A stretch of DNA of 64,000 bases, taken from the NCBI RefSeq assembly GCF_021869535.1, contig NW_026262626.1:124001-188000 (forward strand), given 5' to 3'. The position numbers and the translations under genes were made by a program. This document shows positions 9,929-62,165 of this stretch, piece after piece. The notes beneath the pieces were generated by a model. It did not search any database. It saw only the letters and a list, made by a program, of their open reading frames with translations, and was not told where the DNA came from. Numbering within the stretch: the first letter of the stretch is position 1; every line of letters starts with the position of its first letter. The DNA is from Mytilus californianus (taxonomy: Eukaryota).

Positions 9929-10347
9929 ACTGAAACTTATGGAATAAAATTTCTAGGTATTATACACAAATGTAATAGCATTATCTAACAATATCATCAA
10001 TTCTTATCTTGACAAAACTCTTGCCTATTCACAAAATTATATAATTTTTAAGTGTAACATCATATGAAAGTAAGTAAAACATGTTACACATAAATAACAG
10101 TTAAAGTTCTCGTTATGTCTGATAATTAAAATAAAACAAAAATAAAACAAAATCAACAAAGTAACATATATTTAAAAAAAAAATCATATTTTAAATTAGC
10201 TATTTTCCGTTGTAGATCAATGTAAAACAATACATTGTTTCGGAAGAAAAGGGAATTTTATGTTGTCAATATAGATCAAATTCTTGTCATGTGTATGATC
10301 TGTGGTCAGATGTTTACTGCCACATGATATGAGTCACAGAGAACAAA

Positions 10348-16300: not shown

Positions 16301-19300
16301 TTTTATAATTCCATATTGATACTATGTAATGTTTTATAATTGTATGATGATACTTTAAGTGTTGTCTAATGAAAGTGAAAAGATTTTGGGACGATTTTTA
16401 CACTATTTTCTCTTACATTTTTGCCTTTCTCATTCAGACCATGATGTCTCTATACCATTGTACTTTGGTTTACGAAAATAAAGATATATATATGCTATTG
16501 TATGTAGCTGGTGGATCTGAAAAGCATGTATCCTCATTGTAACGGTATCTTAGACGGGATCCGCGATCGTTATAATTTCAAAACCTAATGTTCTCATATG
16601 TAGGTTTGTTTCAACGTTTGTTTAAAGGAAAATGTCGTGTAAACGAACAATTTTAATTTTCATCTAACGTTAATACCACTATTGGTTTACTGTTAGTTCC
16701 CGAGGGTATCACCAACTTTCCCGGCGAATAATCTTCAATAATTGAAGGATCGCTAGAAACTTAAAGAAGAGAAGTAGAGGTCAGTGCTTTAGTACTTTAC
16801 GTTCAATCACATGGTAACACCACATGCCGGTTTGTTTGAACGAAAACGTTGTGCAAACAGATAATTACGATTGTTTTGCTTCAGTCATAACATGATTCTA
16901 AAATTCGCCGTTGATAAATTCAGAAGAAATTATAAACTCACTCAGGCAAATACGACCTCAGATAAATGTGGGTTTTTTGTAGGTCCCTTTTGGTCACATA
17001 GCTCTCAACATGTTTTATTCTTATACGTTCTTGACTTTCAGGTGATTGAGTTAGAGCGTTCATAGTGAAGGTAGATCAAAAGAGTTTTTTTTCACAATAC
17101 ATTGCGTTCAATGTGTTATCATATTATACATATGCTATAAATAAGCTTTATATTGACACATTACACAGTCTCTCTGTCAGATGTTTTCAATTCTTTTTGA
17201 TCGAAGATATCTTTGATGTCTAACAATCATTCTTCTTTTTTAACCATGTTTAATTCAGTAACTATACCTGATAACATTAATTACCTTGTAAAAAGTTTGA
17301 AATATCTTGTAATTGCGGTAGATTGTCTTCTTTAAAACCACAGTTATCACACAACAGAGGGAAGATGTGGTTAAATTCACGACAAGCATGTGTTGGGTAT
17401 AGCTTTGTTAATTCTCGGAAGATTGTTCCCCTACAAAAAAACAGACATATAGTATATGGCACAGAATTGTTAATTCAAATTGCAACCTTTTTTTAATGTA
17501 ACAATACTGATAAAAAAAAATGTACTAACAAGATGAAATAAGATCGTATTGACATAGAGGAATTTCGCTCACGCGGTCTCTAAGCTGCATCAACAGATTC
17601 CAATCTGATTGAATGGCTGCAAATATCAAACAGAGCATAAAGTCCACCTCAATTGATATGACACATAGGTTTACTCTTTGTTAGCTTTGGTGAGATTGAT
17701 TTTAAATTCCGAAAATGAGACTGTAGACGACAAGCAAATAGTCTTATAACATTTAACGCTGCAGAATTATTTTCTTGTGTGGAACCTCGAGGGGGATTGT
17801 TTGGCACATGTTCGATTACGTCTTTTGTGCATGTCTCTTGCAATCACTTGTCACCTTCGAGAAAGTTTATAAACTGGGTTAGATAATCGTGTACAGTAAC
17901 AAAGTGTATATGCCAATGCATGCGTATTGTGTTTGATAATATGACTTAATTGACGTGATTATGATGATTTTTGCAAACAGCTTCTATCAAATATGAAATT
18001 TACGAACTCAACAACTCAATACAGATAGCCATTTTGTGTGATAGAATCTTACAACCTAAGTAATTAAATATCACACGTTGCAAATTCTACCAATGCATAC
18101 ATACCATGTTTTGATTTCGGCCGGTGTGTAGGTAACCCTTGGTATTTCTTGACCACTGAAAGAAAATATAAATTTAAAGCTGTTTTACATTGTGATATTT
18201 CTTATTTTCATGTTAATATATAATAAAATTTTTTTTACATTTCGAAAATCTAATACCTTAACAAAATATTTGTTTTGGAATGAATCGTTTACTTATTATA
18301 TTATGTGAAGTTGTTTAATATATTTTTCCTTTTAAAAAGTCAGTCACATTCTGTAAAATGTCAGCTTGTATGGTTTTTTTCGCGCTGATTTTTAATATGT
18401 CATTAGTAGTTCTTCATCGGGTTGCAGATAGCATGCATGGTTGCAATTTTCGGACTATCCCCCAGAGACCAATAGGTGTGGATTAAAAAAACAACTATAT
18501 AGGTCACCGTACGACCTCCAAAAATGAGCAAAACCACAACCGCATAGTTAGCTATAAAAGGATTCCGGTATGACTAAACGAGAAGCAATTCAAAAGAAAA
18601 AATACGGTCTGATTCATGCTTAAACAAGAAACTTAAAAGAAATAGGACAGAAAGCAACCAACGACGACCACTGAGTTACAGTCTCCTTACTTGGGACAAG
18701 CACATCAAGAATCAGGCAAGGTTAAGCATGTGTCCGACCCCTAGCCTTGGACAGTGGTGTAGCAGCACAACATAAGATTAAACTGTTAAAATCAATTGGA
18801 ACGGGCTTGACTCATTAGATCGACACGAAGAAAAACAAACGAAAGCAAAAATCAAAAAGTACCGATTAAGAGTACTCACAGTTTTTGAAAGCTAAATCAA
18901 TGCCAATTTTAACCAAAAAAAATGTTTTCGCAGGCTAAAATTATCCCATTTCACTTAGGTTTATCAAACTCCACTCGGTGAATTATAAACCAATTATACT
19001 TATTCAACCTCATCACAATAAGATGTGGCCAATAGTTAATCGTATATGTAGTAACTTAATTTAGTTATCTTAATCAGATCTTTTAGTGAAATGACGATCT
19101 TTAAACGGCATTTGTATATATCATTTGCAATAAAAGTCAAAGCATTATAAGACTGTGCATTTGTAGAAAAAGGTAAATGCTGATATTGTTCAGCATCAAA
19201 GTGAATTAATTATATATCCCCTCTAGTTTTGTTTTCATTATTTGAATAAAACAAATCCTATGCATGCATCAATGACAAATTTAACTTACTGTTTGTAATT

Positions 19301-22300
19301 AAATGCTATGTCTGCAAACTCTTTTCGTCTTGCTCTGTAAATTTTGTCAGTAAATCCCTATAAAGAAATAAAAATGGTATAAAAGAAAATAATTCCATAG
19401 CGGGAAATGCAAATCATGATGGTCTCGATGGTAGGTCATCCATTTTTGTATTCTTTAATTTATTATGCCATTTGTCAATTTTTTTTATATGTCTTGACCA
19501 CTATTCTCTATTCTTTATATTTCAGCACCAAATATTTTGTTATTCTTTTTTGCATTTGCCCATTTTTCTTTTATATTTTTTGGCCTTTATTCTGCACTTT
19601 TTGCCCATTATTCAGTAAACCCCATCCAAATCCTCAATCATTAAAAGTGATGGAATGAAATAAAAAAAAAAAAAAGAGAACAAAAAACGGGAAATGTTGA
19701 ACGTTTGATATTCGCTATAAAGTCGTATAGAACTACTTATATATTTTTGTGAATTGTATACTTTTGAAATGTTTATTTACATTGCTCTACATATATATGT
19801 GTAACAAAGATTGAGTATCCATTGTCATAGCGTCATGACAATGGATACTCACACTGCATAGTCATAAAATGATGATGAATGATCACAACTTTTACATGTG
19901 CTGTGTATACAACTAGATACGACGTTAATTAATGTGGTAGAAAAGATAGATATATAGTATGAATGAAAATATTTCAATAACATACCAAAAATATATTACA
20001 AACTTTTTTAGAGAATACACAAAATTGACATTTCTAAACTTACAGGATGGTCTGAATCCAATTCTGATCCGTAGCTTAAAATCTGGTTTGCAAACCGATC
20101 CAGCTCAACAATCTTTCGTGGAAACCATGGAACTGTGGAACATACAAAAATGGTTATCAAAAATGTAAGATTGTAAATCATATCAGGCAATGTAAATTTG
20201 CAGAAATTAGGAACAATCACCGCGCCGAGTTTTGAATAACATAAACGGTACCAATTTTTCTTCACCAGATGCGCATAACGACAATCAATGTCTCTTCTGC
20301 GATGCTCGAGGCAAAAATATTTAAAAATCCAAAGCTTATTAAAACGATGAGGAGCTATAAACCAAAAAGGAAAAAAAAAATATAGCCAAAGCCAGGCAAG
20401 GAACCAGAGCGTTGCATGAGGGAGAGGATGAATGATTCAATGCTTCAATGCTCGGCTAAAAATGTAGACAACAAATACTGTTTTAAAAGTGCACCTGTAT
20501 ATTTTTTTTAACTATCACAGAACTGTATACAAAGTTATTAATTTAGACTGCGTGCGCAACACAAAGTGGCAGAATAAGCAGACGGTTGATTGAGGCCGCT
20601 AAACAACAAAAAGAAGAGCATTGCATATTCACCAAAAACAGCAACCTACTGTTTTTTGCAACGTTTCTGTCGGAAATGTTTTCTGAAAAGTCATTCATTT
20701 TGTTGAAGTTCTTATTCAAAACTTTTTTGAAAAAAAGATATAACTTACTAGCATCTTTATCAGAATCTCTGGACAAAATACTAAATGTTGTAGATTTCTC
20801 CTTAAGTTCTTGTATGGCTTCTTTGAGTCCTCCGGTTTTGTTGTCACATGACACGAAAAATGCGTACAACGCCTTGTCTTGTTTGGAGGGACGAGATTCT
20901 ATATGATGTAAGTTCACACTGTGTTTCTGAAATAATTGTATCAAGACATTAATCAATGTACGATGAAATAAGAATGAAACTTATTAAGCATTTACATATA
21001 TGATGCATTGTGACGTGTATTCTTCTACTATTTTGCTGGAATTAACAACTTATTTTCACCTTTTCATTGGGTTAGGTGTTCAGGGGCGGATCCAGGATTT
21101 TTGAAAGGGGGCGTAATATGCTGGGAAATAGGATAGATACAACCAAGCGTAGCGAGGCGAAACTATTTTGGACTATTTTATGCTAAAACTCATTCATACT
21201 CGTGAGAAACAACATGATATTTCCCTTTTTCTTTTAGGGGGCGATCAAGGAATGCGTACATCTTCCACGCCCTACCCTGGATCCGCCACTGTGCGTTTCT
21301 AATGAATACCCGATAATAAATGGGGTATGAATGCTACTTATTTAGTATTTTTAATTTTCATTTATACGTTCATATGTGTGTTCTTATACGTATTCATATG
21401 ACGTACTTATATTTCCGACAATTGTTCTGGAAAAAAGGAGACATTTGCATAATTGTCAACCAACAATAGAAAAATTCACATCAAAAAATTGTCATAAGTC
21501 TGTAATTTACCACATGCCAATAATTTACTATTAGGAGTGGAATTTGTATAAGTGACCACTGGTTTTCTTATCCGTGCATTATATTGCTGTACGTGTACAT
21601 GAATTCGTAGGTTGTTTTTTTCAAGAATAAACATTTTTTTTAATATACTTTTTACTTAATCTAATTACCTCGAATATTCGCAATGCTCCACAAAGCGCTC
21701 CGACTTTCTCTGGCAATGTAAAAATTAAACTAAAGCTGCCATCAAAATCCTGTTTTTCGTCTAGATACCCATGATACTGTACGGATGAATGCTGTAACAT
21801 ACCAAAATGTTCATTAATATGAATACTCATTTTATAGTTTTTGTTCATGCATGATTCTTACAGAATAATCTATTTCACTGCAAAAGTATTAATAAACATT
21901 CATAATATCTATGTGGATCAGGTTATCTTGAAGTCGTCTTCTCACGTCACGTGATAGGTCTATGTACAATTGGTAGCAAATGGTCTAATAGAGAACAATC
22001 ATGAAACAATATACATTTATTTATTTGTTCACCCAAGAAAAGCAAATACTTCCCAAGAATCGAATAATATAATTTGTGTTTACTTTAAATCCAATGACCT
22101 AAATATTTAGTTCAATTATATTCTTAAGACATTTACTTCAACATAACACTTGTCAAGGTTTTTTGGATAGTGCCTTATCAGTAGGATAAAAAGCGAGGAC
22201 AGACCAACAAGCAATGTGTTCCTGTTCATATGAAAATGACTTGAAAATTGTGTTCAATAGAGGCAGTTGACAGTTTTAAGAAAATTACAACAATCGTTTG

Positions 22301-25300
22301 GTACCCTCACATTTATTAATACAAAACCATTGAACACAATGTATAATGAGCGTGGTAAGGTTTTTTTTTAATTTCTAGTATACTGGAATTGAAATCGGCT
22401 GGCATAATGGCCTTTACTTGTACACTAGTAATTTATTTCAAAAATGACAAAATCATAGTAAAATCGTGGTCGGAAAATAGCCGCTTAATTTATGATGATC
22501 TCCTTGAAAATAGTAATCTAATTTTCATATTTGCGGTTTGCAGATTAAGGACTGAAGCAACATGTTGTAAACGTTCTTTGAACATGGAAAGATGGCTGGC
22601 TACTTCATTCGATTTATAGAAGTGACAATACATGTGTACTACCAAAAAGTACCAAATGGTAGTTACAATCGTAACGGTTGGAGACCTTTTGCTCAAGGAG
22701 ATTTCCCCTGAATTACCTACAAATTCGACCATCAACACTTTTGTTTGACAGGAATTCATCACCCTGCTCTTAAGATTCAATAATGTATGGTTGAAAGTGG
22801 GTACATGAACTTAAATCGGAAATTGAACTTTGTAAAATTCAAAATTCATCTTATTGTTGGAGATTTGACTATGATTTTGATGTCGCGGTAAAACAGTCTT
22901 TATATATCGAATGCATATTAAGTATAGTGATGTAAAACGTTAAACTGACCTGAATACAATAAAACATAAATCCTTCCATATCAAGGCAAATCAACGATAT
23001 TACCCGATGTAGCTGTGCCGGGGTTAGTCGAATTGATGCTTTTCAACACTTTCTTTGTGTTCTCTAGTTTAATATTTAATATTTGGGTTTCTTGGATTTC
23101 TTTTTTTTTATAATAGTATTGAGATATATAAGGAATACGTGTCAATGAGATCATTTTAGTATAGTGTGTGATAATATCCTTCCGCGTTTCGCAGCAGGGA
23201 GGAAATTTACTACAGAAAAGTTTTCTGCATAAAATGCATGTTTAATCACAAGTATACTTGGTATTCAATTAAGAGCGGGAATTTTCCCACGTATTAAACT
23301 TTTTCAACCCAACACTGATAAAGTCAAGTATCTTAACTTCATTTAGACATGTCGTTTCTTTTTATCCTTTTACTTTATCATCAGGACTTCTATAAGTACT
23401 TCTTCATTTGTTCACAATATGTAAACATAAGTTTTTTCTTGAATGAACTATATATCAAACATGCATATGTCTTCTCTTGAATGAAGTATACATTAAACAC
23501 GGCTGGTAATCTACACACGCAGAACAATCGGTTCTGCAATGAAAACCGTGAGAGGATTTTCCGGTTATGCTTGAGTGGAGTAATTGTCACCGCTTCAAAA
23601 GGTATGTACATTTCTAAATCGCAATTTCCTAATTCAACTGATCAAAATATTAAAAATCGGAGAATGCTATGCTGTGGTGAATACTTTAACAAAGAGACAC
23701 ATGTATCATTTACTGTTGTGCATGGAGTAAAACTCCTACAAAATCAATCGAGTGACTCAGTAATTGCTGAAAAAAGTGACATTTAAATTTTGAGATGGTT
23801 CTATTAACAGACCTACAAGTTCAGATTTAGTTTTTTTTCTGTCAACTGGGTTGAATGTCGTTTTGGGCGGCGTGTACGCTGTCCGAAGGTGATAGACGTC
23901 TTAATAAATCCAAAAACTGCCAATTTTCATTATTTCATGCGTGAGGGGATCGGTTCTGATTGAGGACATCGTGAATGCGTGGGGGGAAGTGCAAACATTT
24001 TCTTAATCTTTGGCCTTGTGACTTTTCTCGACTTATGTGTTTTCATGTACCAGCTTTACATGGAAGTTCAGCTTTGTACGTTAAGTATATGACGTATCAC
24101 ACTGCAGGCAATGGTGGCGTGTTCTATTCATCTAAAAAATAGATTAAAGTCTTAATGCATGCACATGCACAAGAAAAAAACATAGTCAATCATAAATAGT
24201 AAGTAAGTAAGTAAGTAAGTAACTTTTATTTAGAGTCGGGCATGATATGTACAATTCAACAAGGTAAACATGAGCTCTGTAGAGCTCTTAACCGACTTGA
24301 TATTTAAAAACAAATAACAAATTATAAGCACATTTGAACCTGAAATAAATCTAAACCATTTATATTTACGTTGTAGCCATTTCCATTTCCATTGTCAATT
24401 TATATTTATTATAAACTTCAATTAAACTATGCAAGTTACTTGCCTTTCTTTGAAGTGATTGTTGCATTTTTCCATATAAAGATATGATTGCACTTCCCCT
24501 CACGCATTCACGATGTCCTCAATCAGAACCGATCCCCTCACGCATGAAATAATGAAAATTGGCAGTTTTTAGATTTATTAAGACGTCTATCACCTTCGAA
24601 CAGCGCACACGCCGCCCAAAACGACATTCAATCCCGTTGACAGAAAAAAAACTAAATCTGAACTTGTAGGTCTGTTAATAGAACCATCTCAAAATTTAAA
24701 TGTCACTTTTTTCGGCAATTACTCGTGGGACGATTGATTTTGTAGGGGTTTAACTACATGCACAACAGTAAATGATACATGTGTCACTTCGTAAAAGTAT
24801 TCACCACAGCATAGCATTCTCCGATTTTCAATATTTTGATCAGTTGAATTAGAAAATTGCGATTTAGAAATCTACATACCTTTTGAAGCGGTGACAATTA
24901 CTCCACTCAAGCATAACCGGAAAATCCTCTCACGGTTTTCATTGCAGAACCGATTGTTCTGCGTGTGTAGATTACCAGCCGTGTTAAAGTAATTCAATGA
25001 ATGAAGAATATTTTCACATGAATTATTTTAATGTATAGTATCTCGGAATATTTCCGGAAACGGTCTTTCGAACATTGGGTTTTGGACTACTTAATTTTGA
25101 AAGTACTTTTACAAATGTTTTACCCGTATAAATCGTTTTGTAGGTTTTTGTTGGAAGACGGGGTTGTCAAAAATGAGAGATGTTTTACAACTTATCCTAC
25201 AGTTAATTATTTTGATGATACAATTACACATGTTTAAATGTTTCAGTATCTACTCGAAGTAAATGTGATGTCCTCTAAGATATGTTGGCCAGTCGACAAA

Positions 25301-28300
25301 TTCAATATGTTTTATTACATGTATATATAATTCATTGCATTAAGTGTCAATATGGGAACGTACAAATATAACATGTACCAATCCGAAAACCACAAAACAA
25401 CAACATTGTATATTTATTTGGAAAACCGACTAAATGACTCCCCTGGCTGTATAGCTAGCTGGAAAACCGACTAAATGACTCCCCTGGCTGTATATCTAGC
25501 TGGAAAACCGACTAAACAGCTACATTGTCTACCTCCTGTCATTGATGAAATAAATGTTCAATTCGTTCTTAAAATAATTAAATTTTCATGCAAGAAAAAA
25601 AACGTATAAAGATATTTTATGAAATTCAGATAAATTTCCATAATATGAGTCGCACACTCTACGCGTGTCGGTTCTCAATCTTTCGACAACAACAAAAAAT
25701 GACCCGACTGAACTGCTTCTGTTCTGATCTAGGTTAATAAAAAGTGTCGCGACGTATAATGACATATCGTATTGTTCTACAGAATATTGCTGTGAAGATT
25801 ATGTATCGCCTTGAGATGAGTAATTATAATACATACAAATTGATTCATTATACAACAGGCACTGTTCAAATAGACAAATATTAATCCCTCTTTCTATTTT
25901 TGCCAATGGGATCTTAAAATAGTAAATTATCCATTCATGATGGCAAATTTGCAAGACCAGAATATTTGTCTGTAAATTGCTAATAATATTGTTTGACACA
26001 ACCTTTCCTTGATGTTTTTGAGTGATATTATTGCCTGTACTCAGCAGATATTATTGCCTGTACTCAGCAGATATTATTGCCTGTACTCAGCAGATATTAT
26101 TGCCTGTACTCAGCAGATATTATTGCCTGTACTCAGCAAGATAGTTTAAAGAGTTTCAGTCTATTCAAAGTTTGTCTTTCAGTGATTTTAAAGTATGATA
26201 TGGAGCTTACATCATTGAGACAGCTACCCACCACGCAAATAAACTTAATACAATAAGAGGGCGCACAGTATAAATTCTTCAACGATAGACAGGTATATTT
26301 ACAATATGTCGAGCTCTTAAATCGCCCTTAATCTTTAAAATAATGAAACTATATAACAAATCTTCCATCATCACCAATTGTTTTCAAACATTTAAAATCG
26401 TCCCGAATCTATTAATAATAGCAGCCCCCCCCCAAAAAAAAAAAACCCACATCTCACGTTTCTCACGATTATATAACTTTTTTTTATATCATAAACTATA
26501 AGTTGTCCAAAACAATTATCGACTAGCTCTGCTCGGCAGTATCTATTCCACTTTCGGGAATTACGCACCCCTTTCAAAAATCCTAGATCGCTCTTGAAAC
26601 GTATTTCTTATTCGCAGGTACAATAAGTTTTCATAAAGTTTTGACTATTTTCTTTTTCTCAAACCAAAGATATAACTCAAATCAAAGAGCACTACAATTG
26701 TGTAGGCGTATGTCACAAGAAAGGCAGATAATAACCAATCTTATCAAAGTTATTTAGCAGAATTGACAATTTCAATTGTATAATATTGCAATCGTTCATC
26801 AAAAATAAAATGTAAACAAAGATTAAACCGATTAAAAAGTCTTATATAGCGATTACAACAAACATGTTTAAATATCCACTACATATTAAGCAACGGCATT
26901 ACTGTAAAACATTAAACTGACCTGAATACAATAAAACATAAATCCTTCCATATTTAAAATAAAATAAATTAACGATAATATCCAATGTGGATATAAATAT
27001 AACTCTACAGCTGTGCCTGGGTCCGTCTAATTTTAATATTGCATGTATATTTCAGATGTATTTATACCATATCCGAGAACCTTCAATCATCGGTTTATAT
27101 ACGGTTGACATTTTTGATCGACAATGAAATGAATAGTTTTTTGTATTTCATCATTTTCCTATATAATTGCATCACTGTTGTATATACCTGCTGACGACCC
27201 CCATTCAATTAGTATAACATGCAGGTCTTGTGATCAAAGAAATAAAAAGAAAAGGATGCATACTTAAAATCTGCATATTTTTCGTCAAGTTATTTTTTTC
27301 TAAACTGATATTTACTAGTTTGATTTTTAGAGTAAATGGTTAATAAATTAACAACAAGTCTTCTTTAACTTACTTTTAATCTACTCGGCTGATTTTGGGG
27401 GTATTGTAGGGGTCAAGTCATATTTTCGTGTATTAAAATCGTATGTGCTAACACATTTCGGTGAGAACGCTCGTTTAAACTGTTAAACAATTTTTTGTAC
27501 ATGTATCAATAGATCGTGACAACCAGTTTTCCGTAAAATAAAGACATATTGTCTTATTTTTACATTTCATTGTTTAGATCTTGAATTTGCATAAGGTATC
27601 TATTATCTTTAGATTTTAAAACTACAGATATAGGAACCTTTTATTTCCCAACTATGCACTTGATCCCCTCTTTTTTCTTATTTGTATGGTGGGGATGACA
27701 CGCTGTTGGTGTAGGATATAGGGATTTAAAAGCTGGGATCTGGGAAAAAGAAGTGGGAAAAGTGGAAAGTGGGATACAAAAAACGGGATCTGGGAAATGA
27801 GCATCTCGTTTCACCCCCCCCCCCCCACCCCTTTTTCTTTTTGTAAGCGTCGAGAAATGACCACAGGACATGACCAGTAGCTCTTTAATGGTCGAGAGAT
27901 ATGATTACTAGTATTACATCAAAAAGAGAACATAGAAAATTACATACAATTATAAACATCACGGGATTCGTTATAAAAATTTTAAGTCAAACAATATAGT
28001 TTTAATTCAATAAGTAAATAATTTTATTTGTAAACGCGGATATGTTTAAAAGGAAATGATTAAACCTGTAAAATGACAAATTACATTGATAAACACTTCA
28101 ACTGAATGAACTGGCATATTTACAAGTAAAAAAGAGATATTTTATACTGTAGAAAATGTCAAAATTTAATGGATCGTTGTTGTAGGTGAAGTTGGTAAAA
28201 AAAGACTTGTGCAATCAAAATAATGGATTTGTCCTGTGCACCAAAAAACGACTGCTCCACAGAGATATTCAGGACGCTCCATTTGTTATAAAATATTGTG

Positions 28301-28655
28301 TCAGTATCTGTTTTATATACATTGTGTTTGTTATGGGTATAGGAAATCAATCACAACATTGGGTCTTCTCTTTGTTAAATCAATAATAAAAAAAGTATGT
28401 CATCCACATATTTACAAATTTTGCAATTATTTTCTTTATAAATATGTTAGAGGGACGATAGTTTATACTATTGCACGTATTGAAGGACATTCAATATCAT
28501 TATGCTTATCAATTTGCATTTCCAAAACTTTCCATGCAGATATTAATTATAAAAAAACTAATTATACTTACCCCAGATCCCGTTCCATTTTCAATCTTCT
28601 GTCGTTTCTCGGGAGTCGGACCATTACCGATCTTAGAACTGATTCCATTGTCCAT
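10348..28655 (-). CDS. PAH: Phenylalanine-4-hydroxylase, complete, 13 coding exons, 468 aa
   Basis: Exons (minus): 28572-28655, 21669-21791, 20749-20926, 20044-20132, 19290-19357, 18105-18155, 17285-17430, 15362-15497, 14319-14445, 13763-13858, 11594-11727, 10916-11031, 10348-10406. All GT-AG, phases join, total 1407 nt. ACT motifs GAL and IESRPS; [27 protein letters not shown]; iron ligands CHEVLGH and VEFG; YWFT (Trp, not TPH-type Phe) and ITEFQP (not TH-type Asp). Confidence 0.96.
12178..12566 (+). mobile_element. Non-LTR retrozyme / PLE pseudo-LTR, 345-nt monomer with 33-bp terminal direct repeat
   Basis: CGTCTGGCGTATTAAATTATAATCCTGGTACCT at 12178-12210 and 12523-12555; the unit starts at the hammerhead cleavage site; no ORF. 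Confidence 0.8.
12491..12530 (+). ncRNA. Minimal type I hammerhead ribozyme with intact core
   Basis: GTCA-CTGACGA-GTCT-TATGT-AGAC-GAAAC-GCGC-GTC^TGGC: stem I GTCA/TGGC, core CUGANGA and GAAA, stem II GTCT/AGAC, short stem III with palindromic GCGC loop; predicted cleavage after C12526. Confidence 0.85.
12596..12812. repeat. About 165-bp tandem core repeat (helentron-associated/HINE type), about 1.3 units
   Basis: gagagtgctaacaatgcaattttt...ggggcataactc occurs at about 12596 and about 12757. Confidence 0.55.
13222..13533 (+). mobile_element. Pearl/MgE-like non-autonomous helentron-associated element (HINE)
   Basis: AACAAG start, internal (GACG/GAAC)n microsatellite at about 13428-13492, terminal stem-loop ATGCCC-ATAAAT-GGGGCAT and AAAAA end. 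Confidence 0.7.
15981..16334. repeat. 31-bp minisatellite, about 11.4 copies
   Basis: Unit TGTAATGTTTTATAATTGTATATTGATACTA in a PAH intron. Confidence 0.95.
18485..18900 (-). mobile_element. Old degraded Naiad 3' tail (same family as 1211-1880)
   Basis: ataggtcaccgtacgacc..gctataaaagg..ggacagtggtgtagcagcacaacataag..gagtactc align with 1290-1710. Confidence 0.6.
20243..20425 (-). mobile_element. Second retrozyme/pLTR family fragment with inactivated hammerhead
   Basis: Reverse complement of 20264-20304: atcg-CAGAAGA-gacattgattgtc-GTTA-tGCGCaTC-tggt; hammerhead geometry with both core segments mutated. Confidence 0.55.
21081..21291. mobile_element. MITE with 15-bp TIR CAGGGGCGGATCCAG / CTGGATCCGCCACTG
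   Basis: Terminal inverted repeats with 1 mismatch; in PAH intron 2. Confidence 0.8.
23498..24983. mobile_element. 1.49-kb non-autonomous foldback DNA transposon with about 500-bp TIRs
   Basis: 23498 to about 24000 is the near-identical reverse complement of about 24482-24983; termini CACGGCTGG..CCAGCCGTG flanked by TTAAA on both sides. Confidence 0.9.
24198..24330 (-). mobile_element. 3' tail of a CR1/L2-like LINE or SINE
   Basis: Minus strand: GAGCTC-TACA-GAGCTC stem-loop, AATAAA, then (TTAC)n microsatellite tail. Confidence 0.5.
25419..25516. repeat. 41-bp tandem repeat, about 2.4 copies
   Basis: GGAAAACCGACTAAATGACTCCCCTGGCTGTATAGCTAGCT repeated. Confidence 0.85.
26024..26138. repeat. 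23-bp perfect tandem repeat x5
   Basis: GATATTATTGCCTGTACTCAGCA x5. Confidence 0.95.
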
Positions 28656-53985: not shown

Positions 53986-55229
53986 ATGTCCCAATGATTT
54001 ATAAAAATTTTTATGTAAGCTATTTCTATCTTTTTAAAAGATGAGTAAGATGTGGTAAAATCTGTATCTCAGACTGCTTAGGTGAGGAGTAAAAATTTCT
54101 CAATATAAATAAGATATTTCAAAGAGGGACCCATCCATGTCAAAAACTCAAAGTAAATAATGTGCCCTTACACCAAGTCCTTGAAGGAGGTTATTAGGCA
54201 ACGACCAATCATCTTTTGAAGGGGGCATGAGATTTCTTCTAGGGACAAACATTTTGTTTTGTACTTTGATAAAAAAGAAACATCTTTTTTTCCGAACATA
54301 CACACATTTTGTATACCCCCTTATTTTCAGAGAAAACCAACTACTTTTTTCATTTCCTTTCAAAAACAATATATTTTCTGAAGAAATTAAGAATCAAACA
54401 ATTGAATTGAAATAGCCATGCCCACACCAAAACAAATGAATGGTTGGTGTCTTATTTGATCCTTTATTGATGTTTTCTGTACCTTATTTTATGTTTAAAT
54501 CGATAATTCACGCCTATGATATCATATGTTTCATGGTTTTTGGAAATTTAGTTACATTGTATATAAAAATATTTTTGAATTACTTTTTCTTTTAAAAGAA
54601 ATCCGATAAATCTTACATGTGTTTAATTATTACATATCATTACAAGAAAAATGTTTTGTGTGTACATAATATAAAACTATTATATATTTGGTTATATTCC
54701 AATTTTTAAAAATGGCTCTCATCCAATTATGTCACGAAAACTAGTGACAATGAACAATCTCAAATGGTGTCGTGTAATCAATAACCTTCCGATATTGCAG
54801 CAAGTCTATTTAAAGTGTGACACATATATTTAAATGCTTTAAATATAGATAAGGAAAATTTTCTGATATAAATACTTTTATAGATAAGCTTGACATTTCT
54901 GAAAAAGAATTAATTCCGTAATGGATATGATGTACTAGTGGTAGCCATGTATATTATAAAACCGTTGAATAAAATGAATTGCATATCTTTTATTGCAAAA
55001 CAAACTTTCAACTTATAACTTGTAACAGAAAAAAAAATGACAAAATTGTATGAAATAATATATAACGATGAAAACAATATTTATTTAGATCAACTCATAT
55101 GTAAATGTTCCCACGTACATGTTCCTTAATTAGATATGAATAAATGTAAAGAAGATATAGTGTCTACGCAATTTTGAAAAAAAAAAAAGAATTTAGAGCT
55201 AACTAGTCAGTAGACAGTTTCTATTTTTT

Positions 55230-58200
55230 GCATATACAAAAATAATAATTCCAGGATGATTTATGCTTGCTATGTTATTATAGAAATGTTCTTCAAATTC
55301 TACAGAGTTTAATAATTGAAGCTATGTTACTTAAATTTTATGTCAAATCGTCATTTTTACGAACGAAAGACTTTAAAGGAATATCATTCTAAAATTAACT
55401 TGCGTTTCCAAGAAAAGATATACATTATTTTGCTACTTTCAATATGACGGCTAAAATTAGGAACCTTCTCATATTTTTTCAGTGCAATATTGGTTTAAAA
55501 AAATCCTATCACGTGCCTTGTAAAATCAATATAAAATAGTGCGCTTATAGAAAAGCTCGTATTACAACATTTATCAACATGGACTCTGCAGAGGTAAGGA
55601 TTACTGCATAAATTGTAAAAAGGGACTGTATTTGAAATTAAAAAAAAACTACTTGTATAATTTGAGGAAATAATAGTCAAGCAAACAGTTGAAAATTATT
55701 TTTCTCACCATAACTATATGGTTAGTTGATAGTCTTGAAAATGGAAAACTATTTTTAAACAATATTTGAAATTCTTTGAAAAGAGAAGGGAAGGCAAAAC
55801 GGAACAAAATTCAAAAATTACAAAATATTAAAAAATCAACGACTTGAATATATCAAGTTAAAAAAAATGTTGGCTTATACAACTAATAGACTCTCTAAAA
55901 ATATGAGGACCATGCATACTTTATTGGTTCCTAGTGAAGTAACTGAATAAATATCATAATACAAATATTTTTAGGATGTCGATTCAAAAATAAAATTAAT
56001 GCTTTAAAGTAAAAGAAATGTAATGTAAATTATAAAACGGGCTGTCCATTTAAAGTGTTGTTACTTCAAGATTGTATGAGTATGAACAAGAACAAGTAAA
56101 TTAAAGAAAAATAAATATGAAAAAAAAATGCAAAAAATGTAACCTCTTATGTAAAATTAGATAATTACAAGGAAAAACAAGTGAATATGATAAGTCGATG
56201 GGTGGGGTTGAACTTATCAATTATAGCACAAGCTGAAAATCAGATAAAAAATATTTGTGTTATTTCATATTATGTTAACATATTAATATGATGCAGATAA
56301 ACAGATATGAGGCAAACCCCGATTTAAAACATATTATGCAAAATACATGTAAACATTCAAGATAACTAACGTGATGTCCCATGATGCTTATTTTTATCAT
56401 ATACTTAAATCTATTTTAAATCCTGCATTTGTATTTAATATAAACTCAATCAAATATCCCATTACATATGGTATTCCCCAAACTCCAGTAAAGTATAAAC
56501 CAATCGTTTTCTTTAAATCCCGGCGGATATTGAAACTTAATATTATAAAAAAATATATGTGCTTTTTGTATTACATATAAATATCAAGAAATGAGTCACA
56601 TTGTACATATGTAATCATATCTAATTAAGCGAAAGCTAATTACCAAGAATTATACCACTAACAGAGTCATTTAAAGAACATGCGACACAAAAGGAAAGAC
56701 AATAATACATGTACTTTAAGAGTTGCATAATATTCAAAAAATCAGCAAGAGAGAATTTAAGTATAAAAAGTCATCTATTTTACCCCAGATATTAAGGGAG
56801 TAACATACCGCAGTGTCTTTGCCTGTTTTGATCTTGATGCAACAACATTTATTTTAAAAACTACTAATTTTATTTGTCTTTCGACAACAGGTATGTTTCA
56901 GCGGATATATATCCACTTGCGCCAAAAATGCGTTTCTTTGCGCCAATGCTACCGTTGCTCCTCTTATTTTTAAAATACAATGCATTATATTTGCACCAAA
57001 AATGAAGTATATTATTGCGCTTATTCGGATATAAAATCTTGTTTTATAATTTTGATAAACTACTTATTAAGCGATCTTTAAAATGCCTTTTCTCAGCATA
57101 TTGATATTGTTAGTAGAATGGTATACAAAAGTGCCAGGACATCTAAAAATCCAAACATCAAATATTCGAAATTCTTAACACGAGGAAAGAGAATGAAAAA
57201 TAAAAAATACAAAACCAAAAATAAAAAATAAAATTTGAGGATTAGCTGGGATATTTCACTCCAGTATAATATATAGCACGTGTAAGCAACACAATATTTG
57301 TATACAAATTATATCTTCAGTAATAACTCTTCAGAAAAATATTTCATCGGTAACATTAAAAAAACTGCAAAAAGTTATGAGTTGAACTGTTAATATTAAA
57401 ATCGGACCAGAAATAATTTTTTTGCAATTTTTTTAAAAATTGTGTTTTTATGTGAAATAATCAGCATAATTTTCGGGATGTGAAACACTTTAAATCACTC
57501 ACTGTAGTAGAACAACACTAAGGAATTTCTCCAATGATATGGTTTTTTGAAAGAATACATTTCCATACTTTTCATATACAAAAATACTAATTCCAAGATT
57601 TGTCACATCTGTTGAGAATATATATACTAAATCAACTATACGTCCAACATTATTTACATCATTCACAAACATTTTTACAAAATGTTAATGACAAGGTTAA
57701 ACTACATTTGAAAAATATCCATAGTATATTTTTAAATGTATACACGGTTATTATTTTTTTTACAACCAAATAGGAAGGAAAACATTTGACCCGGTATAAG
57801 CTTGTGTTTATTTTTTTTCTTTAAAAAATTAAGATATTCTTCAAATTCTACAAAGAAGATTATGGAACCTCTGTCACCTTAAAAGTTTGTTGAATCGTCA
57901 TTTTTTTTTAACGTAAGATTTTGAAAGAATATTTTTTTCATATTAACTTGCTCTTCCAAGTATACATATAAAATCGTAACTTTCGATATGATGGCTAAAA
58001 TAAGAACCTTATAATAGGTTTACAGTTCAATAGAATGACCGGGAAACATCACGTGTGTTGAAATCAATATAAATCATGTTCATATAAAAGGGAACTCCTC
58101 ATATTATTACAGTTACAACATTAATTAACATGGACTCTGCAGAGGTAAGGAATGTTGTATAAGATTGTCAAAACGGACCGCATTTGATCTTTTAAATGTA

Positions 58201-61000
58201 GTTGTATAATTTTGAGGAAATAAAAATCAAGCAAATGTTTGAAAAATATTTCTTTCACCATATTGATATGACTTAAAAAGTGCCAGGGTAGCTAAAAATC
58301 TTTTGATACAACCTTTAAAACTTTTGATATAAGGAACGAGAATGCCTTAAAGACCCCCCCCCCCCCCCCTTAAAAAATCAGCGAGATCAATATTTCAAGT
58401 GGTCATTTTTTGACATTAAAACTAAAGGACTCTGAAAATATGGGGACTATCCATTCTCAATTGGTTCTGAGTGACCTACATGTTATTGAATGACTATTGT
58501 TGCAGTACAATTATTTTTGAAATATGGTTTTAAAAATATAAATGTTAGAATTTTAGAACGTGAAATTAAAGAATTAAGGAAAAGAAAAAGGAACAAATGT
58601 AATGTAAATAATTTAACTGAGGTACATATAAAACATATATAGTATTACTTCAATATTTTGTAAGTATGAACAAGAACAAGTGAATTAAAGAAGAACAAAG
58701 ATAAAAGAATGCACAGAATGTAACTACTAACTTTAAAATAAAATAAATGAAAAGAATAAAAAGTAAATGATGGGGTATTGACACAAGATGAAAAATTAGA
58801 ACAAAATATTTGTTTTTACTTCATATTATATTAAAATTAAGAAAATAAGATGCGGATTAAAGGTTGTTAAACAAAAACCAAAAGAACACAAATTATACCA
58901 ACATAGTTATTCAAGTTCACTAACGCGAGATCCCAAGATGCATTTGTTTACTTATATACTTAAAACTGGGTCATGACTCTTTTTACATTCTTGACGTATA
59001 AGCTATATAGACTCAATCAAAATCCTGATTTCCTTATTCTCCCACCTCCAGTCAAATGCAATCCAATCGTTATTCTCTAAATCCCGGCGGATGTCGAAGC
59101 TTAATAAAAAAAATTATAAAGATTGTTAGTTTTATTTTATATAAATAACTTGGGTGTACCTATAGTCATATTCAATCAAGCGGAAGCTAATTACCAAGAA
59201 TGAAACAATTAAAAGACGACATTTAAAGAATGTGTGACACAAGAGGAAAGACTACAAGTTGAATAATATTTAAAAATAGACAAGACTCAATTCATATATG
59301 AAAGGTCATCTATTTTACACCGAGAGTCTAAGGAAGTAACATTCCGCAATGTTTTTGTTTTTATCTTGATAATATTATAAGTTCACAAAATACTAATTTC
59401 ATTTCTTCCAACCACTAGTATGTTTTCGGTTGTGATATCCAATTGTGCTAAAATAGTATACGTAATGGTGCGCTCAAAATGCGTTACTTTTGCCGCAAAA
59501 CTCATTTGCACCAATGCTACCGTTACGTCCCTTATTTTCAAAGTACCCAGTACTATTTGCACCAAAAAAATAAGTATATATTTACGCCTATTTGTATATA
59601 AAACCTTCATGTATAGTTTTGACGAAATACAGGTCGATTGAAACTTTTCTTTTCTGGCCATATTGATTTGGTTAGTCGATGGACAAAAAAAGTGACAGGA
59701 TAAATAAAAATATTTATATACAATATTTGAATTTTTTTATATAAGGAAAGAGAATGCCAAAAAAAAAAACAACAAAAAAACAAAAAATAAAACATAAACC
59801 CCAAAGTATAAAATTGGCGACATAAATATTAAAAAAAATTAAAACAAACCTTTGTAAATTTCATGCGTCCGACGCTTTTCTGGATATACCTTCATCAGGT
59901 AATCAAATGATCATTTTTTGGCATTCGAAACTAAAGACTCTCTGACAATATTAGGACAATGCATTCTCTAATGTTTGGAAGTGATGAAATTGATTAGGTT
60001 TTGTAATAAAAGTATTCTTTTCGATATTGAATAAAAAAATAAATTTAGGAATTTGTTTAATGACTCTTGAATGTAAGATATAGCTATCAGTATTAGTGAA
60101 AAGGAAAATGAACTGTTATGTAAATAATTTAAGGGGCGGCACATATAAAGTGTTGCTACTTCCAAGATTGTATACATACAAACGAGAAAACTTATTACAA
60201 TAATTTAACGAAAAACAAAAATAAAAAATACACAAAGTATAGCTCCTAAATGTAATAAAAAAGAAACGAAAAGTAAATAAAATAAAGAGTTTTGTTATAA
60301 AATCCGTACAATAATCCTTCTTAAATCCTGGACTTATATTCTAATATATACTCAATCAAAATCCTGATTTCCCTATTCTCCCACCTCCAGTTAAGTGCAA
60401 ACCAATCGTTATCCTCTAAATCCCGGCGGATATTGAAACATTAAAATTACATCTTAAGAGTATTGTTACATATAAATAACACGAAATGGGAACTAATTAC
60501 CAAGAATGAAATAATTAATAGTCGTCATTTAAAGAACTTGTGATACAAAAGCAAAGACAATAATACATGTACTTTACAAGTTGCGTAATATTTAAAAATC
60601 AGTAAGAAAGAATTCAAATATGAAGGGTCATCTGTTTTACCCCAAGAGTTTAAGGTAGTAAAATTCCGCAATGACAATGCCTGTTTAATCATGATACAAG
60701 TATCTCTCGATTCATTTTACAAAGCCTTTAGAGCAAAATTTATTTGGCTTCCTACCACAAATATATTTTCGACAGCGATATACCTTTGCGCCAAAAATGC
60801 GTTCTTTTGCGCCATATCTCGTTTGTGTCAATGTTACTGTTGAGCATCTTATTTTATAAATTACCTTGTATTATTTACAGTACAGATGAAATATACCTTT
60901 GCGCCTATTCGGATGTAAATAAAACAATGAGTCTACACACACATTAAAGACCGACAATTTACACTTGCTTGAAGACTGATTTTTAAAGCTTTTTTCAACG
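55230..61000 (+). repeat. Old tandem duplication array: 1.3-1.4-kb core x3, promoter/exon block x2
   Basis: Collinear landmarks recur, e.g. TAAATCCCGGCGGAT at 56514, 59078, 60417; CTAATTACCAAGAA at about 56636, 59187, 60492; GTATGAACAAGAACAAGT at about 56080 and 58663. Confidence 0.8.
55579..55593 (+). CDS. Candidate micro first coding exon MDSAE (copy A)
   Basis: aacATGGACTCTGCAGAG|GTAAGG; upstream CACGTG and TATA-like CAATATAAAA; 25 nt identical to copy B. Confidence 0.5.
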
Positions 61001-62165
61001 TACATATTTTTCGGATTTATGTCAACTTCTTACGGCTATTGCGTGTGTACTTAACAGTTTAATTAAGGACCTTTGAAAAATAAAAGTTGGCGCAAATAAC
61101 ATATCGTAACAAAACAGAAATTAACGCTAATGTATGCATAAATGGCAAGCCGTTTTAGTATTCATTCATTCTCATATAATATATAAGATATCTCATATAA
61201 TATATAAGATATCTTATATAATCTAGTTTTTATAAGATATCTTCTACATGTAAACTTTATAAGATACCTTCTAAATTTGATAAAAGGGATAAGTCCTTAG
61301 ACATATATAAGAAAAAGAAGATTTGGTATAACTGCAAATGAGACAAATATCAACCAGAGTCCATATGACGTGAATGTAGACATCTATAGGTCGCCGTTCG
61401 AAGTAAATCTTTTATTTTCACCACCAAACGTCATACAGCAACAACTGTTGGCAAAACGTTGTCAAGAAGGTTGCATCAAACGAAATAGAAAACGCTATGG
61501 AAAAGATATAGATCCTTTGATTTTTTACTTAATTTACAATATATCAATGTTATAAAAATTCATATTATCGAACATCACTATTATCCACAAGCACATATTA
61601 TTGAACAGATGCGTTGTTCGATCACTCGTTGAATATTTATCTTGAATTGTTGCATTTTGAAACAAAAGAAATCATTACTGAGTAGTGAGTTTATATATTG
61701 AGTCCATAGCGTCGAATCATATTGCTGAAGAAGGATTAAGGTTAGTATTGTCCAAAATAATTTCCCAGACAAAGGGCAAAATTTATAAAAGAGTTATAAA
61801 CTCCCTACGTGAATGAGAAAATGGAAATTATTGATCCCTTCTGCTTGTAGTTTATATCAATTGTCCGAAGCGCTTTTCTGGCTAAACCTTCACCAAGAAC
61901 GATATAGTTGAGTATGATACCTTGTGAGCTAGAATTAAAATAGAATCAAACTGTGCAGGTCTAATACCTTGAAGTACATTAATATACGGTAAACTGGTTA
62001 TAAAAATATATCTCGCTCTAAATATGCCAAAAATGTTTGCTAATGGACATAAATATTTTGTCCTGTTTCTAGGAACCACAAAGTGCAGCCCAACCAGACG
62101 ACATTGTAGCTGTGAAGTTTACGACTAAGTTCGATAATTTGATTCCAGCGCTATCAATATTTAAG
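58130..62165 (+). CDS. Candidate divergent aromatic amino acid hydroxylase (PAH/TPH-like ACT domain) gene, exons 1-2; remainder beyond the window
   Basis: Exon 58130-58144 (MDSAE, phase 0, GTAAGG). Exon 62073-62165 (ttttgtcctgtttctag| 93 nt open |GTATAG) = EPQSAAQPDDIVAVKFTTKFDNLIPALSIFK, resembling TPH/[25 protein letters not shown] and ending at the same phase-0 intron. Confidence 0.5.

What the first reader, a model, noticed from the sequence alone, without database searches (positions are those of the whole stretch)
58130..62165. Hidden, divergent PAH/TPH-like paralog invisible to the ORF track
A 93-nt exon with strong acceptor and GT donor reads IVAVKFTTKFDNLIPALSIFK. This matches the ACT beta1-alpha1 pattern AVxFxxK..L[IV]xALx[IL]F of aromatic amino acid hydroxylases and ends at the same phase-0 intron as PAH exon 2 in this window (ALRIFE|). 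It joins in frame to a conserved MDSAE first exon. The G-[AG]-L motif involved in allosteric Phe binding is replaced or shortened (FDNL), hinting at altered regulation or substrate. An extra hydroxylase about 30 kb from PAH would matter in a taxon that makes heavy use of Tyr/DOPA chemistry. The catalytic exons are not in the window, so this is a short-motif inference.
Basis: inference. Interest (0 to 1): 0.72.

Follow-up and report, generated by a model that had tools for sequence, protein, structure and literature searches.

The report
Second mussel phenylalanine hydroxylase gene
The 93-base exon is real: it is exon 2 of a second, fast-evolving phenylalanine hydroxylase gene of the California mussel, lying head-to-head with the ordinary one, but the gene is already in RefSeq and a second mussel PAH is already reported in the literature.

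Summary
Observation confirmed, interpretation supported, novelty low.

Window 62073-62165 (+) is a 93-nt, phase-0/phase-0 exon with AG and GT borders. Eleven more exons follow on the + strand, starting 94 bases past the window's end. With a 5-codon first exon (MDSAE) they make an intact 13-exon, 428-codon reading frame.

The translation is identical to RefSeq XP_052086641.1/XP_052086642.1, "protein henna-like isoform X1/X2 [Mytilus californianus]". That protein sits on a contig of exactly this contig's length. Orthologues of 428 aa are annotated in four more Mytilus species. A 2026 preprint cites earlier work reporting two PAHs in Mytilidae.

Exon 2 encodes ACT strand beta1 and helix alpha1 in an AlphaFold model of the M. 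edulis orthologue. It ends at the same intron position as exon 2 of the neighbouring PAH gene.

The paralogue keeps the iron ligands and other active-site residues I checked (dN/dS 0.08 in the catalytic part). Its regulatory domain is degenerate:
- a short N-terminal tail;
- ExVxAL replaced by TKFDNL (G46 becomes D);
- Pfam ACT and the NCBIfam PAH cut-off are both missed.

I infer altered or lost activation by phenylalanine. The MDSAE exon exists as two tandem copies (55579, 58130), and M. edulis annotation uses the upstream one.

The parts
62073..62165 (+). Exon 2 of the PAH paralogue ('PAH2', RefSeq 'protein henna-like'). 93 nt, phase 0 at both ends. Encodes residues 6-36, which hold ACT strand beta1 and helix alpha1.
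   Evidence: model identical to XP_052086641.1; orthologous exon in M. edulis; secondary structure; island of conservation.
58130..58144 (+). First coding exon, downstream copy B (ATG..GAG|gtaagg, MDSAE), with a TATA-like box and a CACGTG motif upstream.
   Evidence: In M. edulis this copy reads MDSAD|gtattg.
55579..55593 (+). First coding exon, upstream copy A, with an identical 15-nt coding sequence and gtaagg donor. It is the orthologue of the first exon used in the M. edulis annotation.
55218..59571 (+). Tandem duplication with a period of about 2.55 kb and about 79% identity over the 900 nt aligned around each exon 1. It carries promoter plus exon 1 twice (about 55218-57003 and 57560-59571). 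A third partial copy of the intronic part lies at 60344-60673.
   Evidence: Both copies have separate orthologues in M. edulis.
10347..28655 (-). The canonical PAH gene ('PAH1', XP_052086639.1, 468 aa), lying head-to-head with PAH2. Exon 1 is at 28655-28572, exon 2 at 21791-21669 (ends ALRIFE), and the last exon at 10406-10347. The two start codons are about 27 kb (copy A) or 29.5 kb (copy B) apart.

Best explanation
Shown: window 62073-62165 is exon 2 of a 13-exon gene. It lies at G000 contig C46:179579 or 182130 to 199259, + strand, and exons 3-13 lie just beyond the window's end. The gene encodes a 428-aa aromatic amino acid hydroxylase of the phenylalanine hydroxylase (PAH) type. It is a paralogue of the canonical PAH gene, which starts about 27 kb away on the opposite strand. 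It is conserved at 428 aa in five Mytilus species and is under purifying selection.

Shown: the protein keeps the three iron ligands, the other active-site residues I checked and the C-terminal helix that forms the tetramerisation coiled coil in solved PAH.

[quoted passage not shown] It has lost most of the N-terminal tail, with about 16 residues before beta1 against about 47 in PAH1. It has also lost the ExVxAL motif of the allosteric phenylalanine site, now TKFDNL. The domain evolves several times faster than that of PAH1.

Inferred, at roughly even odds: the enzyme still makes tyrosine from phenylalanine with tetrahydrobiopterin and iron, but it is no longer switched on by phenylalanine in the way PAH1 should be. 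It would then be either constitutively active or controlled in another way.

Untested: two tandem promoter plus first-exon copies may give alternative transcripts encoding the same protein.
For: Gene structure and identity:
- Downstream Biopterin_H and PAH-model exon hits on the + strand.
- 13-exon model with one stop, at the end, and all AG/GT borders.
- Identical to RefSeq XP_052086641.1/.2 on a 42,634,926-bp contig, the same length as C46.

Conservation:
- Orthologues in M. edulis, M. trossulus, M. galloprovincialis and M. coruscus, all 428 aa.
- The same exon structure in M. edulis.
- A 1407-nt Logan contig with an uninterrupted ORF of 421 aa, 71% identical, from another sample. This reads as a spliced transcript.
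- dN/dS is 0.12 overall, 0.077 in the catalytic part and 0.25-0.37 in exon 2, with dS about 0.35.

PAH type:
- The best PDB hits are full-length rat and human PAH at 512 bits, against TPH2 at 479 and TH at 462.
- NCBIfam scores are PAH 613.8, TPH 536 and TH 516.
- Foldseek's top hits are full-length PAH with 413-417 aligned columns.
- Positions matching H285, H290, E330, R270 and S349 are invariant, and W326 is at least 90% conserved, in a 99-sequence alignment. PAH2 carries the consensus residue at each.

Regulatory domain:
- AlphaFold2 gives beta1 18-23, alpha1 25-37, beta2 42-49, beta3 57-63, alpha2 70-80 and beta4 83-87, with pLDDT about 85-91 over residues 21-60 and residues 1-14 disordered.
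- The Phe-site motifs ExVxAL (43-48), NLTIxS (61-67) and YxF (77-79) come from PMC4822156.
- PAH2 has TKFDNL, SISHVES and YDF, whereas PAH1 has EKVGAL, NLHHIES and YAF.
- G46 is G in 98% of the 92 other PAHs in the alignment and D in all five Mytilus PAH2.
- Between M. californianus and M. edulis, PAH2 differs at 39 of 428 residues and PAH1 at 9 of 468. The regulatory parts differ at 19 of 90 and 3 of 128.
Against: - No transcript or enzyme data for this species were available here, so expression rests on RefSeq models and one Logan contig from a relative.
- The loss of phenylalanine activation is inferred from motifs only. Two of the three site motifs are partly kept (SISHVES, YDF), and the ACT fold is predicted with good confidence. 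A working allosteric site of changed specificity is therefore not excluded.
- PAH2 falls below NCBI's curated cut-off for tetrameric PAH (613.8 against 704.8), so 'same function as PAH' is not guaranteed.
- The active-site lid tyrosine (Y138) is alanine in Mytilus PAH2, which could change kinetics or specificity.
Confidence: 0.85

Rival explanations
1. PAH2 is a normally regulated PAH. The ACT domain is merely divergent in sequence and still binds phenylalanine at the dimer interface and activates the enzyme.
For: - An ACT fold is predicted with pLDDT about 85-91.
- The H-x-E-S part of the NLTIxS motif and YxF are kept in M. californianus.
- dN/dS of the regulatory part is 0.26-0.28, so it is still constrained.
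Against: - ExVxAL is replaced in all Mytilus PAH2, with G46 to D at a site that is G in 98% of other PAHs.
- The Logan orthologue is further degraded (PVKNL, IQSRE, KDV).
- YxF is HDF and ESRP is ESRQ in the M. edulis group.
- The N-terminal tail is cut to about 16 residues.
- The Pfam ACT and TH_ACT scores are below threshold.
Confidence: 0.3
2. PAH2 has changed substrate, for example to tryptophan (a non-neuronal serotonin route) or to tyrosine (free DOPA), rather than only changing its regulation.
For: - One exon (8/9) scores higher with the TPH model than with the PAH model.
- The lid residue Y138 is A.
- Titles and abstracts returned by the paper search report that PAH enzymes of other animals hydroxylate tryptophan (PMC9898190, PMC12315947, listed; abstracts only, papers not read).
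Against: - W326 is kept (YWF, not the YFF seen in the TPH-like hits).
- The position aligned to V379 of PAH is Ile in both PAH1 and PAH2. That V379 in PAH and Asp425 in TH are specificity determinants is from memory, not tested here.
- Over the whole protein, PAH is the best model by 78 bits.
- PAH1 has the same pocket residues, so nothing in the pocket sets PAH2 apart.
Confidence: 0.1
3. The gene is a decaying duplicate, or the exon is a chance open frame picked up by gene predictors.
For: - The exon alone has no significant database match.
- The regulatory domain evolves fast.
Against: - The frame is intact and all splice sites are canonical in two species.
- The length of 428 aa is kept in five species.
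- dN/dS is 0.12 overall and 0.077 in the catalytic part.
- The exon is an island of conservation in an unalignable intron.
- A spliced transcript exists in a more distant relative.
Confidence: 0.02

Closest known systems
RefSeq 'protein henna-like isoform X1/X2 [Mytilus californianus]' (XP_052086641.1, XP_052086642.1), with its 428-aa orthologues in M. coruscus, M. edulis, M. trossulus and M. galloprovincialis
   Same: Identical in sequence to the 13-exon model built here. The orthologues are 90.7-96.7% identical, without gaps.
   Different: Nothing differs: this is the same gene. The public records name it only by similarity. Nothing found here discusses its regulatory domain.
The 'second PAH' of Mytilidae, reported in work cited by bioRxiv 10.64898/2026.08.17.745212 as its reference 36
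   Same: [quoted passage not shown] Four such genes are found in this genome too: two PAH-type at C46:0.13-0.20 Mb, a TH-type at C46:18.59 Mb and a TPH-type at C57:31.03 Mb.
   Different: The cited primary paper is not in the library and could not be read. My quick tree puts PAH2 with a Pinctada and a Littorina protein, outside the main lophotrochozoan PAH group. An AU test does not reject a mussel-specific duplication (p=0.243).
Mammalian phenylalanine hydroxylase (PDB 5DEN, 5FGJ, 6N1K, 6HYC)
   Same: - Same three-part architecture of ACT regulatory domain, catalytic domain and C-terminal helix.
- 52-54% identity to the full-length chains in the Foldseek hits.
- Same iron ligands and pocket residues among those I checked.
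- Nearly the same intron positions and exon lengths (from memory of the human exon lengths, not tested here): 68, 136, 96, 134 and 116 nt.
   Different: - The N-terminal autoregulatory tail is reduced. Residues 1-14 are disordered and beta1 starts at residue 18, against about residue 35 in rat PAH.
- ExVxAL becomes TKFDNL.
- There is a 6-residue deletion in the linker before WFP, which is WIP here.
- Y138 becomes A and C237 becomes R.
- Relative to my memory of the human gene, exon 6 is split in two and exons 8 and 9 are fused. PAH1 of the mussel shares this layout.
The canonical mussel PAH next door (PAH1, XP_052086639.1, window 10347-28655, - strand)
   Same: 59% identical overall. The exon-intron layout matches from exon 2 on, and exons 4-12 have the same lengths.
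   Different: PAH1 passes NCBI's PAH equivalog cut-off (756.6 against 704.8) and Pfam ACT (32.8 against 27). PAH2 fails both, at 613.8 and 12.9-16.3. PAH1 keeps all three Phe-site motifs and a long N-terminal tail. It evolves about four times more slowly.

Membership tests
Biopterin-dependent aromatic amino acid hydroxylases (Pfam PF00351) | Catalytic domain matches the family profile above the gathering score. | tested here: met
   P0392, which is identical to the window's gene product, scores 550 bits against a cut-off of 22.7 over residues 92-420. Exon-by-exon hits on the + strand downstream of the window are also over the cut-off.
Biopterin-dependent aromatic amino acid hydroxylases (Pfam PF00351) | The 2-His-1-carboxylate iron site (H285, H290, E330 in PAH numbering). 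| tested here: met
   H257, H262 and E302 of PAH2 align to these residues. They are invariant columns in a 99-sequence alignment.
Tetrameric phenylalanine 4-monooxygenase (NCBIfam TIGR01268, equivalog) | Whole-protein score at or above the curated cut-off of 704.8 bits. | tested here: not met
   PAH2 scores 613.8 bits. That is its best model, 78 bits above TPH. PAH1 scores 756.6 and passes. I therefore call it PAH-type or PAH-like, not an equivalog of PAH.
Tetrameric phenylalanine 4-monooxygenase (NCBIfam TIGR01268, equivalog) | Closer to PAH than to TH or TPH in sequence and in tree position. | tested here: met
   PDB scores are PAH 512, TPH2 479 and TH 462 bits. The tree roots it inside the PAH group with support 99.
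ACT domain (Pfam PF01842 / PF21417 TH_ACT) | Sequence match above the gathering score of 27 bits. | tested here: not met
   PAH2 scores 12.9-16.3 bits with ACT, and the M. edulis orthologue scores 15 bits with TH_ACT. PAH1 scores 32.8 with ACT (M. californianus). With TH_ACT, PAH1 scores 28.9 for the M. trossulus orthologue and 26.2, just under the cut-off, for M. californianus.
ACT domain (Pfam PF01842 / PF21417 TH_ACT) | [quoted passage not shown] | tested here: met
   The AlphaFold2 model of the M. edulis orthologue (90.9% identical) gives E18-23, H25-37, E42-49, E57-63, H70-80 and E83-87, with block pLDDT of 85-91 over residues 21-60. Foldseek aligns 413-417 columns to full-length PAH. This is a prediction, not a solved structure, and it was made on the orthologue.
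Allosteric phenylalanine site of PAH (PMC4822156) | Motifs ExVxAL (43-48), NLTIxS (61-67) and YxF (77-79). | tested here: not met
   ExVxAL is TKFDNL. NLTHIES is SISHVES. YxF is YDF in M. californianus and M. coruscus, and HDF in the M. edulis group. Binding itself is not testable with these tools.

The most novel reading that the evidence does not exclude
PAH2 is a deregulated phenylalanine hydroxylase that is not gated by phenylalanine. Mytilid mussels would keep it beside the regulated housekeeping enzyme to supply tyrosine at high flux. The demand could come from DOPA-rich byssal proteins in the foot glands, or from melanisation in haemocytes. Similar short paralogues seen in other molluscs would be parallel solutions to the same demand.
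Probability: 0.25. Interest if true: 0.5.

Novelty: already known. Interest (0 to 1): 0.22.

Why it matters
That is a useful check on the method. The gene itself is already modelled in RefSeq for this genome and for four sister species, and a second PAH in Mytilidae is already reported.

What I did not find discussed elsewhere is modest:
- The paralogue lies head-to-head with the canonical PAH gene.
- It carries two conserved tandem copies of promoter plus first exon.
- It has lost the ExVxAL part of the allosteric phenylalanine site and most of the N-terminal tail.
- It evolves about four times faster than its neighbour while its catalytic core stays under strong constraint.

If enzyme assays showed that it is no longer gated by phenylalanine, it would be a natural example of how regulation of PAH can be removed. 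It could also be a lead for tyrosine supply in animals that use much DOPA.

Tried and rejected
- Exon 2 alone against NCBIfam, Pfam and PDB sequences gave no hit.
- The search for homologous proteins with the open frame of exon 3 (62 aa) found no candidate, because of the length window.
- The search of representative proteins with exon 6b returned mostly fragments. No near-identical protein appeared, and the best identity was 72%.
- Alignments of one long public protein with many exon pieces were scrambled by MAFFT and dropped. The first row of the third one turned out to be a vertebrate-type TH.
- An alignment of P0067 with four exon references was clean, and that search found the Mytilus proteins.
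Exons were searched by reference. The joined coding sequence was built only inside scripts from stored files, to translate it and compare it with stored proteins and loci.
- The idea that PAH2 is older than Mytilidae is left open. The quick tree groups it with Pinctada 358 aa and Littorina 433 aa, but the AU test does not reject a Mytilus PAH1+PAH2 clade (p=0.243), and long branches are involved.
- The loci of those two proteins each hold a single hydroxylase gene within 10 kb flanks, so synteny gave no answer.
- The primary paper behind the preprint's statement on two PAHs could not be found in the library.
- Two papers mention 'henna' or 'phenylalanine-4-hydroxylase' transcripts, one in mussel haemocytes after Vibrio challenge and one among byssus-related genes of the green mussel (PMC6697025, PMC7971044). 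Neither says which paralogue, so they are leads only.
Full report
**Where the window lies.** The window is G000 contig C46:124001-188000, + strand. Later results identify the genome as Mytilus californianus: RefSeq proteins of that species sit on a contig of 42,634,926 bp, which is exactly the length of C46.

**The observation.**
- At 62073-62165 the + strand reads tcctgtttctag|GAA...AAG|gtatag and translates without a stop to EPQSAAQPDDIVAVKFTTKFDNLIPALSIFK.
- At 58130-58144 it reads ATGGACTCTGCAGAG|gtaagg, which is MDSAE.
- The 31-residue exon alone matches nothing in NCBIfam, Pfam or the PDB sequences, even at E=10. The motif resemblance by itself is not evidence.

**What lies downstream.**
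- A six-frame search of the whole genome with Pfam Biopterin_H and with NCBI's PAH model found four aromatic amino acid hydroxylase genes.
- One is on the - strand inside the window (C46:134.3-152.7 kb).
- One is on the + strand starting just past the window's end (C46:188.1-197.9 kb).
- One is at C46:18.59 Mb and matches a TH better. One is at C57:31.03 Mb and matches a TPH better.
That test is passed.

**The gene model.** I fetched C46:188001-204000 as L021 and L022 and placed exons by frame, AG/GT borders and the profile hits.

| Exon | C46 coordinates | Length (nt) |
|---|---|---|
| 1 | 182130-182144, or the copy at 179579-179593 | 15 |
| 2 | 186073-186165 (the finding) | 93 |
| 3 | 188094-188253 | 160 |
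| 4 | 189712-189800 | 89 |
| 5 | 190128-190195 | 68 |
| 6a | 191211-191261 | 51 |
| 6b | 191871-192016 | 146 |
| 7 | 193266-193401 | 136 |
| 8/9 | 194379-194505 | 127 |
| 10 | 195809-195904 | 96 |
| 11 | 197024-197157 | 134 |
| 12 | 197809-197924 | 116 |
| 13 | 199204-199259 | 56 |

- The total is 1287 nt, or 428 codons plus one stop at the end. Every border is AG or GT.
- Exon 2 joins exon 3 as ...ALSIFK|NHDVSISHVESRPSK. This mirrors ...ALRIFE|[15 protein letters not shown] of the neighbouring gene, with the same phase-0 intron.
It was built only inside scripts from the stored files.

**Public proteins.**
- Exon-sized queries cannot reach full-length proteins in the large protein search.
- I therefore aligned one public protein (P0067) with four exon references and searched with that alignment.
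- This returned 428-aa proteins named 'protein henna-like' or 'phenylalanine-4-hydroxylase' from M. trossulus, M. edulis and M. galloprovincialis. They begin MDSAEEP.SAAQ...AVKFTTKFDNLIPAL.
- Their clusters also hold XP_052086641.1/XP_052086642.1, 'protein henna-like isoform X1/X2 [Mytilus californianus]', and a M. coruscus protein.
- The M. californianus protein is identical, residue for residue, to my model.
- The canonical neighbour is XP_052086639.1, 468 aa. Its first exon is at window 28655-28572.
- The finding is therefore exon 2 of a gene that NCBI has already modelled in this genome.

[quoted passage not shown] **Conservation.**
- The M. edulis locus (L027) is collinear with the window.
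- It has the same 13 exons with the same lengths and borders. Joined, they translate exactly to the annotated M. edulis protein.
- Between the two species dS is about 0.35. dN/dS is 0.12 overall, 0.077 for residues 91-428, 0.26-0.28 for residues 1-90 and 0.25-0.37 for exon 2 alone.
- Exon 2 is 81.7% identical in DNA. The flanks drop to about 50%, the level of shuffled sequence, apart from 66% in the first 100 nt upstream.
- A 1407-nt Logan contig from another sample (SRR34486192) carries an uninterrupted 421-aa reading frame, 71% identical to the M. edulis PAH2. It has the same short N-terminus, so it reads as a spliced transcript of an orthologue in a more distant relative.

**What kind of enzyme.**
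- The best solved relatives are full-length rat and human PAH at 512 bits, ahead of TPH2 at 479 and TH at 462.
- NCBIfam gives PAH 613.8, TPH 536 and TH 516 bits. The PAH score is below the curated cut-off of 704.8, which the neighbour PAH1 passes with 756.6.
- The iron ligands (H285, H290, E330 in PAH numbering) and R270, S349, W326, F254, T278 and E286 are all present.
- The position aligned to V379 of PAH is Ile in both mussel paralogues. From memory, this position helps to set Phe against Tyr specificity. Nothing in the pocket points to tyrosine or tryptophan as a new substrate.
- In a 99-sequence alignment, Mytilus PAH2 departs from residues that are at least 90% conserved at 25 sites. 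Most changes are conservative. The notable ones are G46D, F121I, Y138A (the active-site lid tyrosine, from memory), C237R and P314S/A.

**The regulatory domain.**
- An AlphaFold2 model of the M. edulis orthologue, made with the 99-sequence alignment, has mean pLDDT 84.
- It shows beta1 18-23, alpha1 25-37, beta2 42-49, beta3 57-63, alpha2 70-80 and beta4 83-87. Residues 1-14 are disordered.
- Foldseek aligns 413-417 columns of the model to full-length PAH structures.
- In sequence the domain is degenerate. Pfam ACT scores 12.9-16.3 bits against a threshold of 27, while PAH1 scores 32.8.
- The crystal structure of the human regulatory-domain dimer places phenylalanine between ExVxAL (43-48) and YxF (77-79) of one protomer and NLTIxS (61-67) of the other (PMC4822156).

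| Motif | PAH1 | PAH2 |
|---|---|---|
| ExVxAL (43-48) | EKVGAL | TKFDNL |
| NLTIxS (61-67) | NLHHIES | SISHVES |
| YxF (77-79) | YAF | YDF, or HDF in the M. edulis group |

- In addition, ESRP has become ESRQ in the M. edulis group.
- The Logan orthologue is degraded further.
- The tail before beta1 is about 16 residues, against about 47 in PAH1.
- PAH2 differs between M. californianus and M. edulis at 39 of 428 residues, 19 of them in the first 90. PAH1 differs at 9 of 468.
- From this I infer, but cannot show, that activation by phenylalanine is lost or changed.

**First exon.**
- The MDSAE exon and about 1.8 kb around it are duplicated in tandem, with a period of about 2.55 kb and about 79% identity. 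Both copies carry CACGTG and a TATA-like box upstream and the gtaagg donor.
- Each copy has its own orthologue in M. edulis, so the duplication is older than the species split.
- In M. edulis the annotated gene starts at the upstream copy. The downstream copy there reads MDSAD|gtattg.
- RefSeq lists two M. californianus isoforms with the same protein. That would fit alternative use of the two first exons, but I could not check it.

**Origin.**
- A quick maximum-likelihood tree of 56 proteins places PAH2 inside the PAH group. It joins the Logan protein (support 99), then a Pinctada and a Littorina protein, outside the main lophotrochozoan PAH clade.
- These are long branches. An AU test does not reject a clade of Mytilus PAH1 plus PAH2 (p=0.243).
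- A mussel-lineage duplication, as reported in the literature, remains compatible with the data.

**Verdict.** The gene is already known from annotation and the literature, so the interest is low. The remaining open point is functional: whether this paralogue has escaped phenylalanine gating, and in which tissue it works.

Noticed in passing
window 55218-57003, 57560-59571 and 60344-60673: Promoter plus first exon of the paralogue is duplicated in tandem, with a third partial copy of the intronic part. Both full copies keep ATG, donor, a TATA-like box and CACGTG. Each has its own orthologue in M. edulis, which suggests two alternative promoters kept by selection.
   Followed up: partly
proteins P0342 and P0314 (Potamilus, Sinanodonta, 429 aa), P0360 (Crassostrea virginica, 436 aa), P0354 (Bradybaena, 435 aa), P0218 (Littorina, 433 aa): Several other molluscs have a second, shorter PAH-like protein. 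Where I looked (Potamilus 429, C. virginica 436 and Littorina 433), the N-terminal tail is truncated and the ExVxAL motif is altered. In the quick tree the Potamilus/Sinanodonta, C. virginica and Bradybaena ones nest inside their own lineage's PAH, so they look like independent duplications with a similar outcome.
   Followed up: partly
proteins P0391 (M. californianus isoform X3, 372 aa), P0382 (M. galloprovincialis isoform X3, 393 aa), P0388 (M. trossulus, 369 aa): RefSeq predicts shorter isoforms of the paralogue. One ends after residue 372, so it lacks the C-terminal helix. Two start at or after exon 3, so they lack exon 2 and half of the ACT domain.
   Followed up: no
G000 C46:18592251-18603008 (+) and C57:31028634-31040111 (-): The other two aromatic amino acid hydroxylase genes of the genome. 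The first matches a TH better and lies on the same contig as the PAH pair, 18 Mb away. The second matches a TPH better.
   Followed up: partly
protein P0001 (821 aa, representative library): An 821-aa protein matches the hydroxylase catalytic domain twice, with TPH-like motifs. It is either a tandem fusion or a merged gene model. Its origin is unknown.
   Followed up: no
protein P0383 (1105 aa, 'uncharacterized protein [Mytilus edulis]'): A 1105-aa M. edulis RefSeq protein sits in the same 90% cluster as the 428-aa paralogue. It is possibly a read-through or merged model at the same locus.
   Followed up: no
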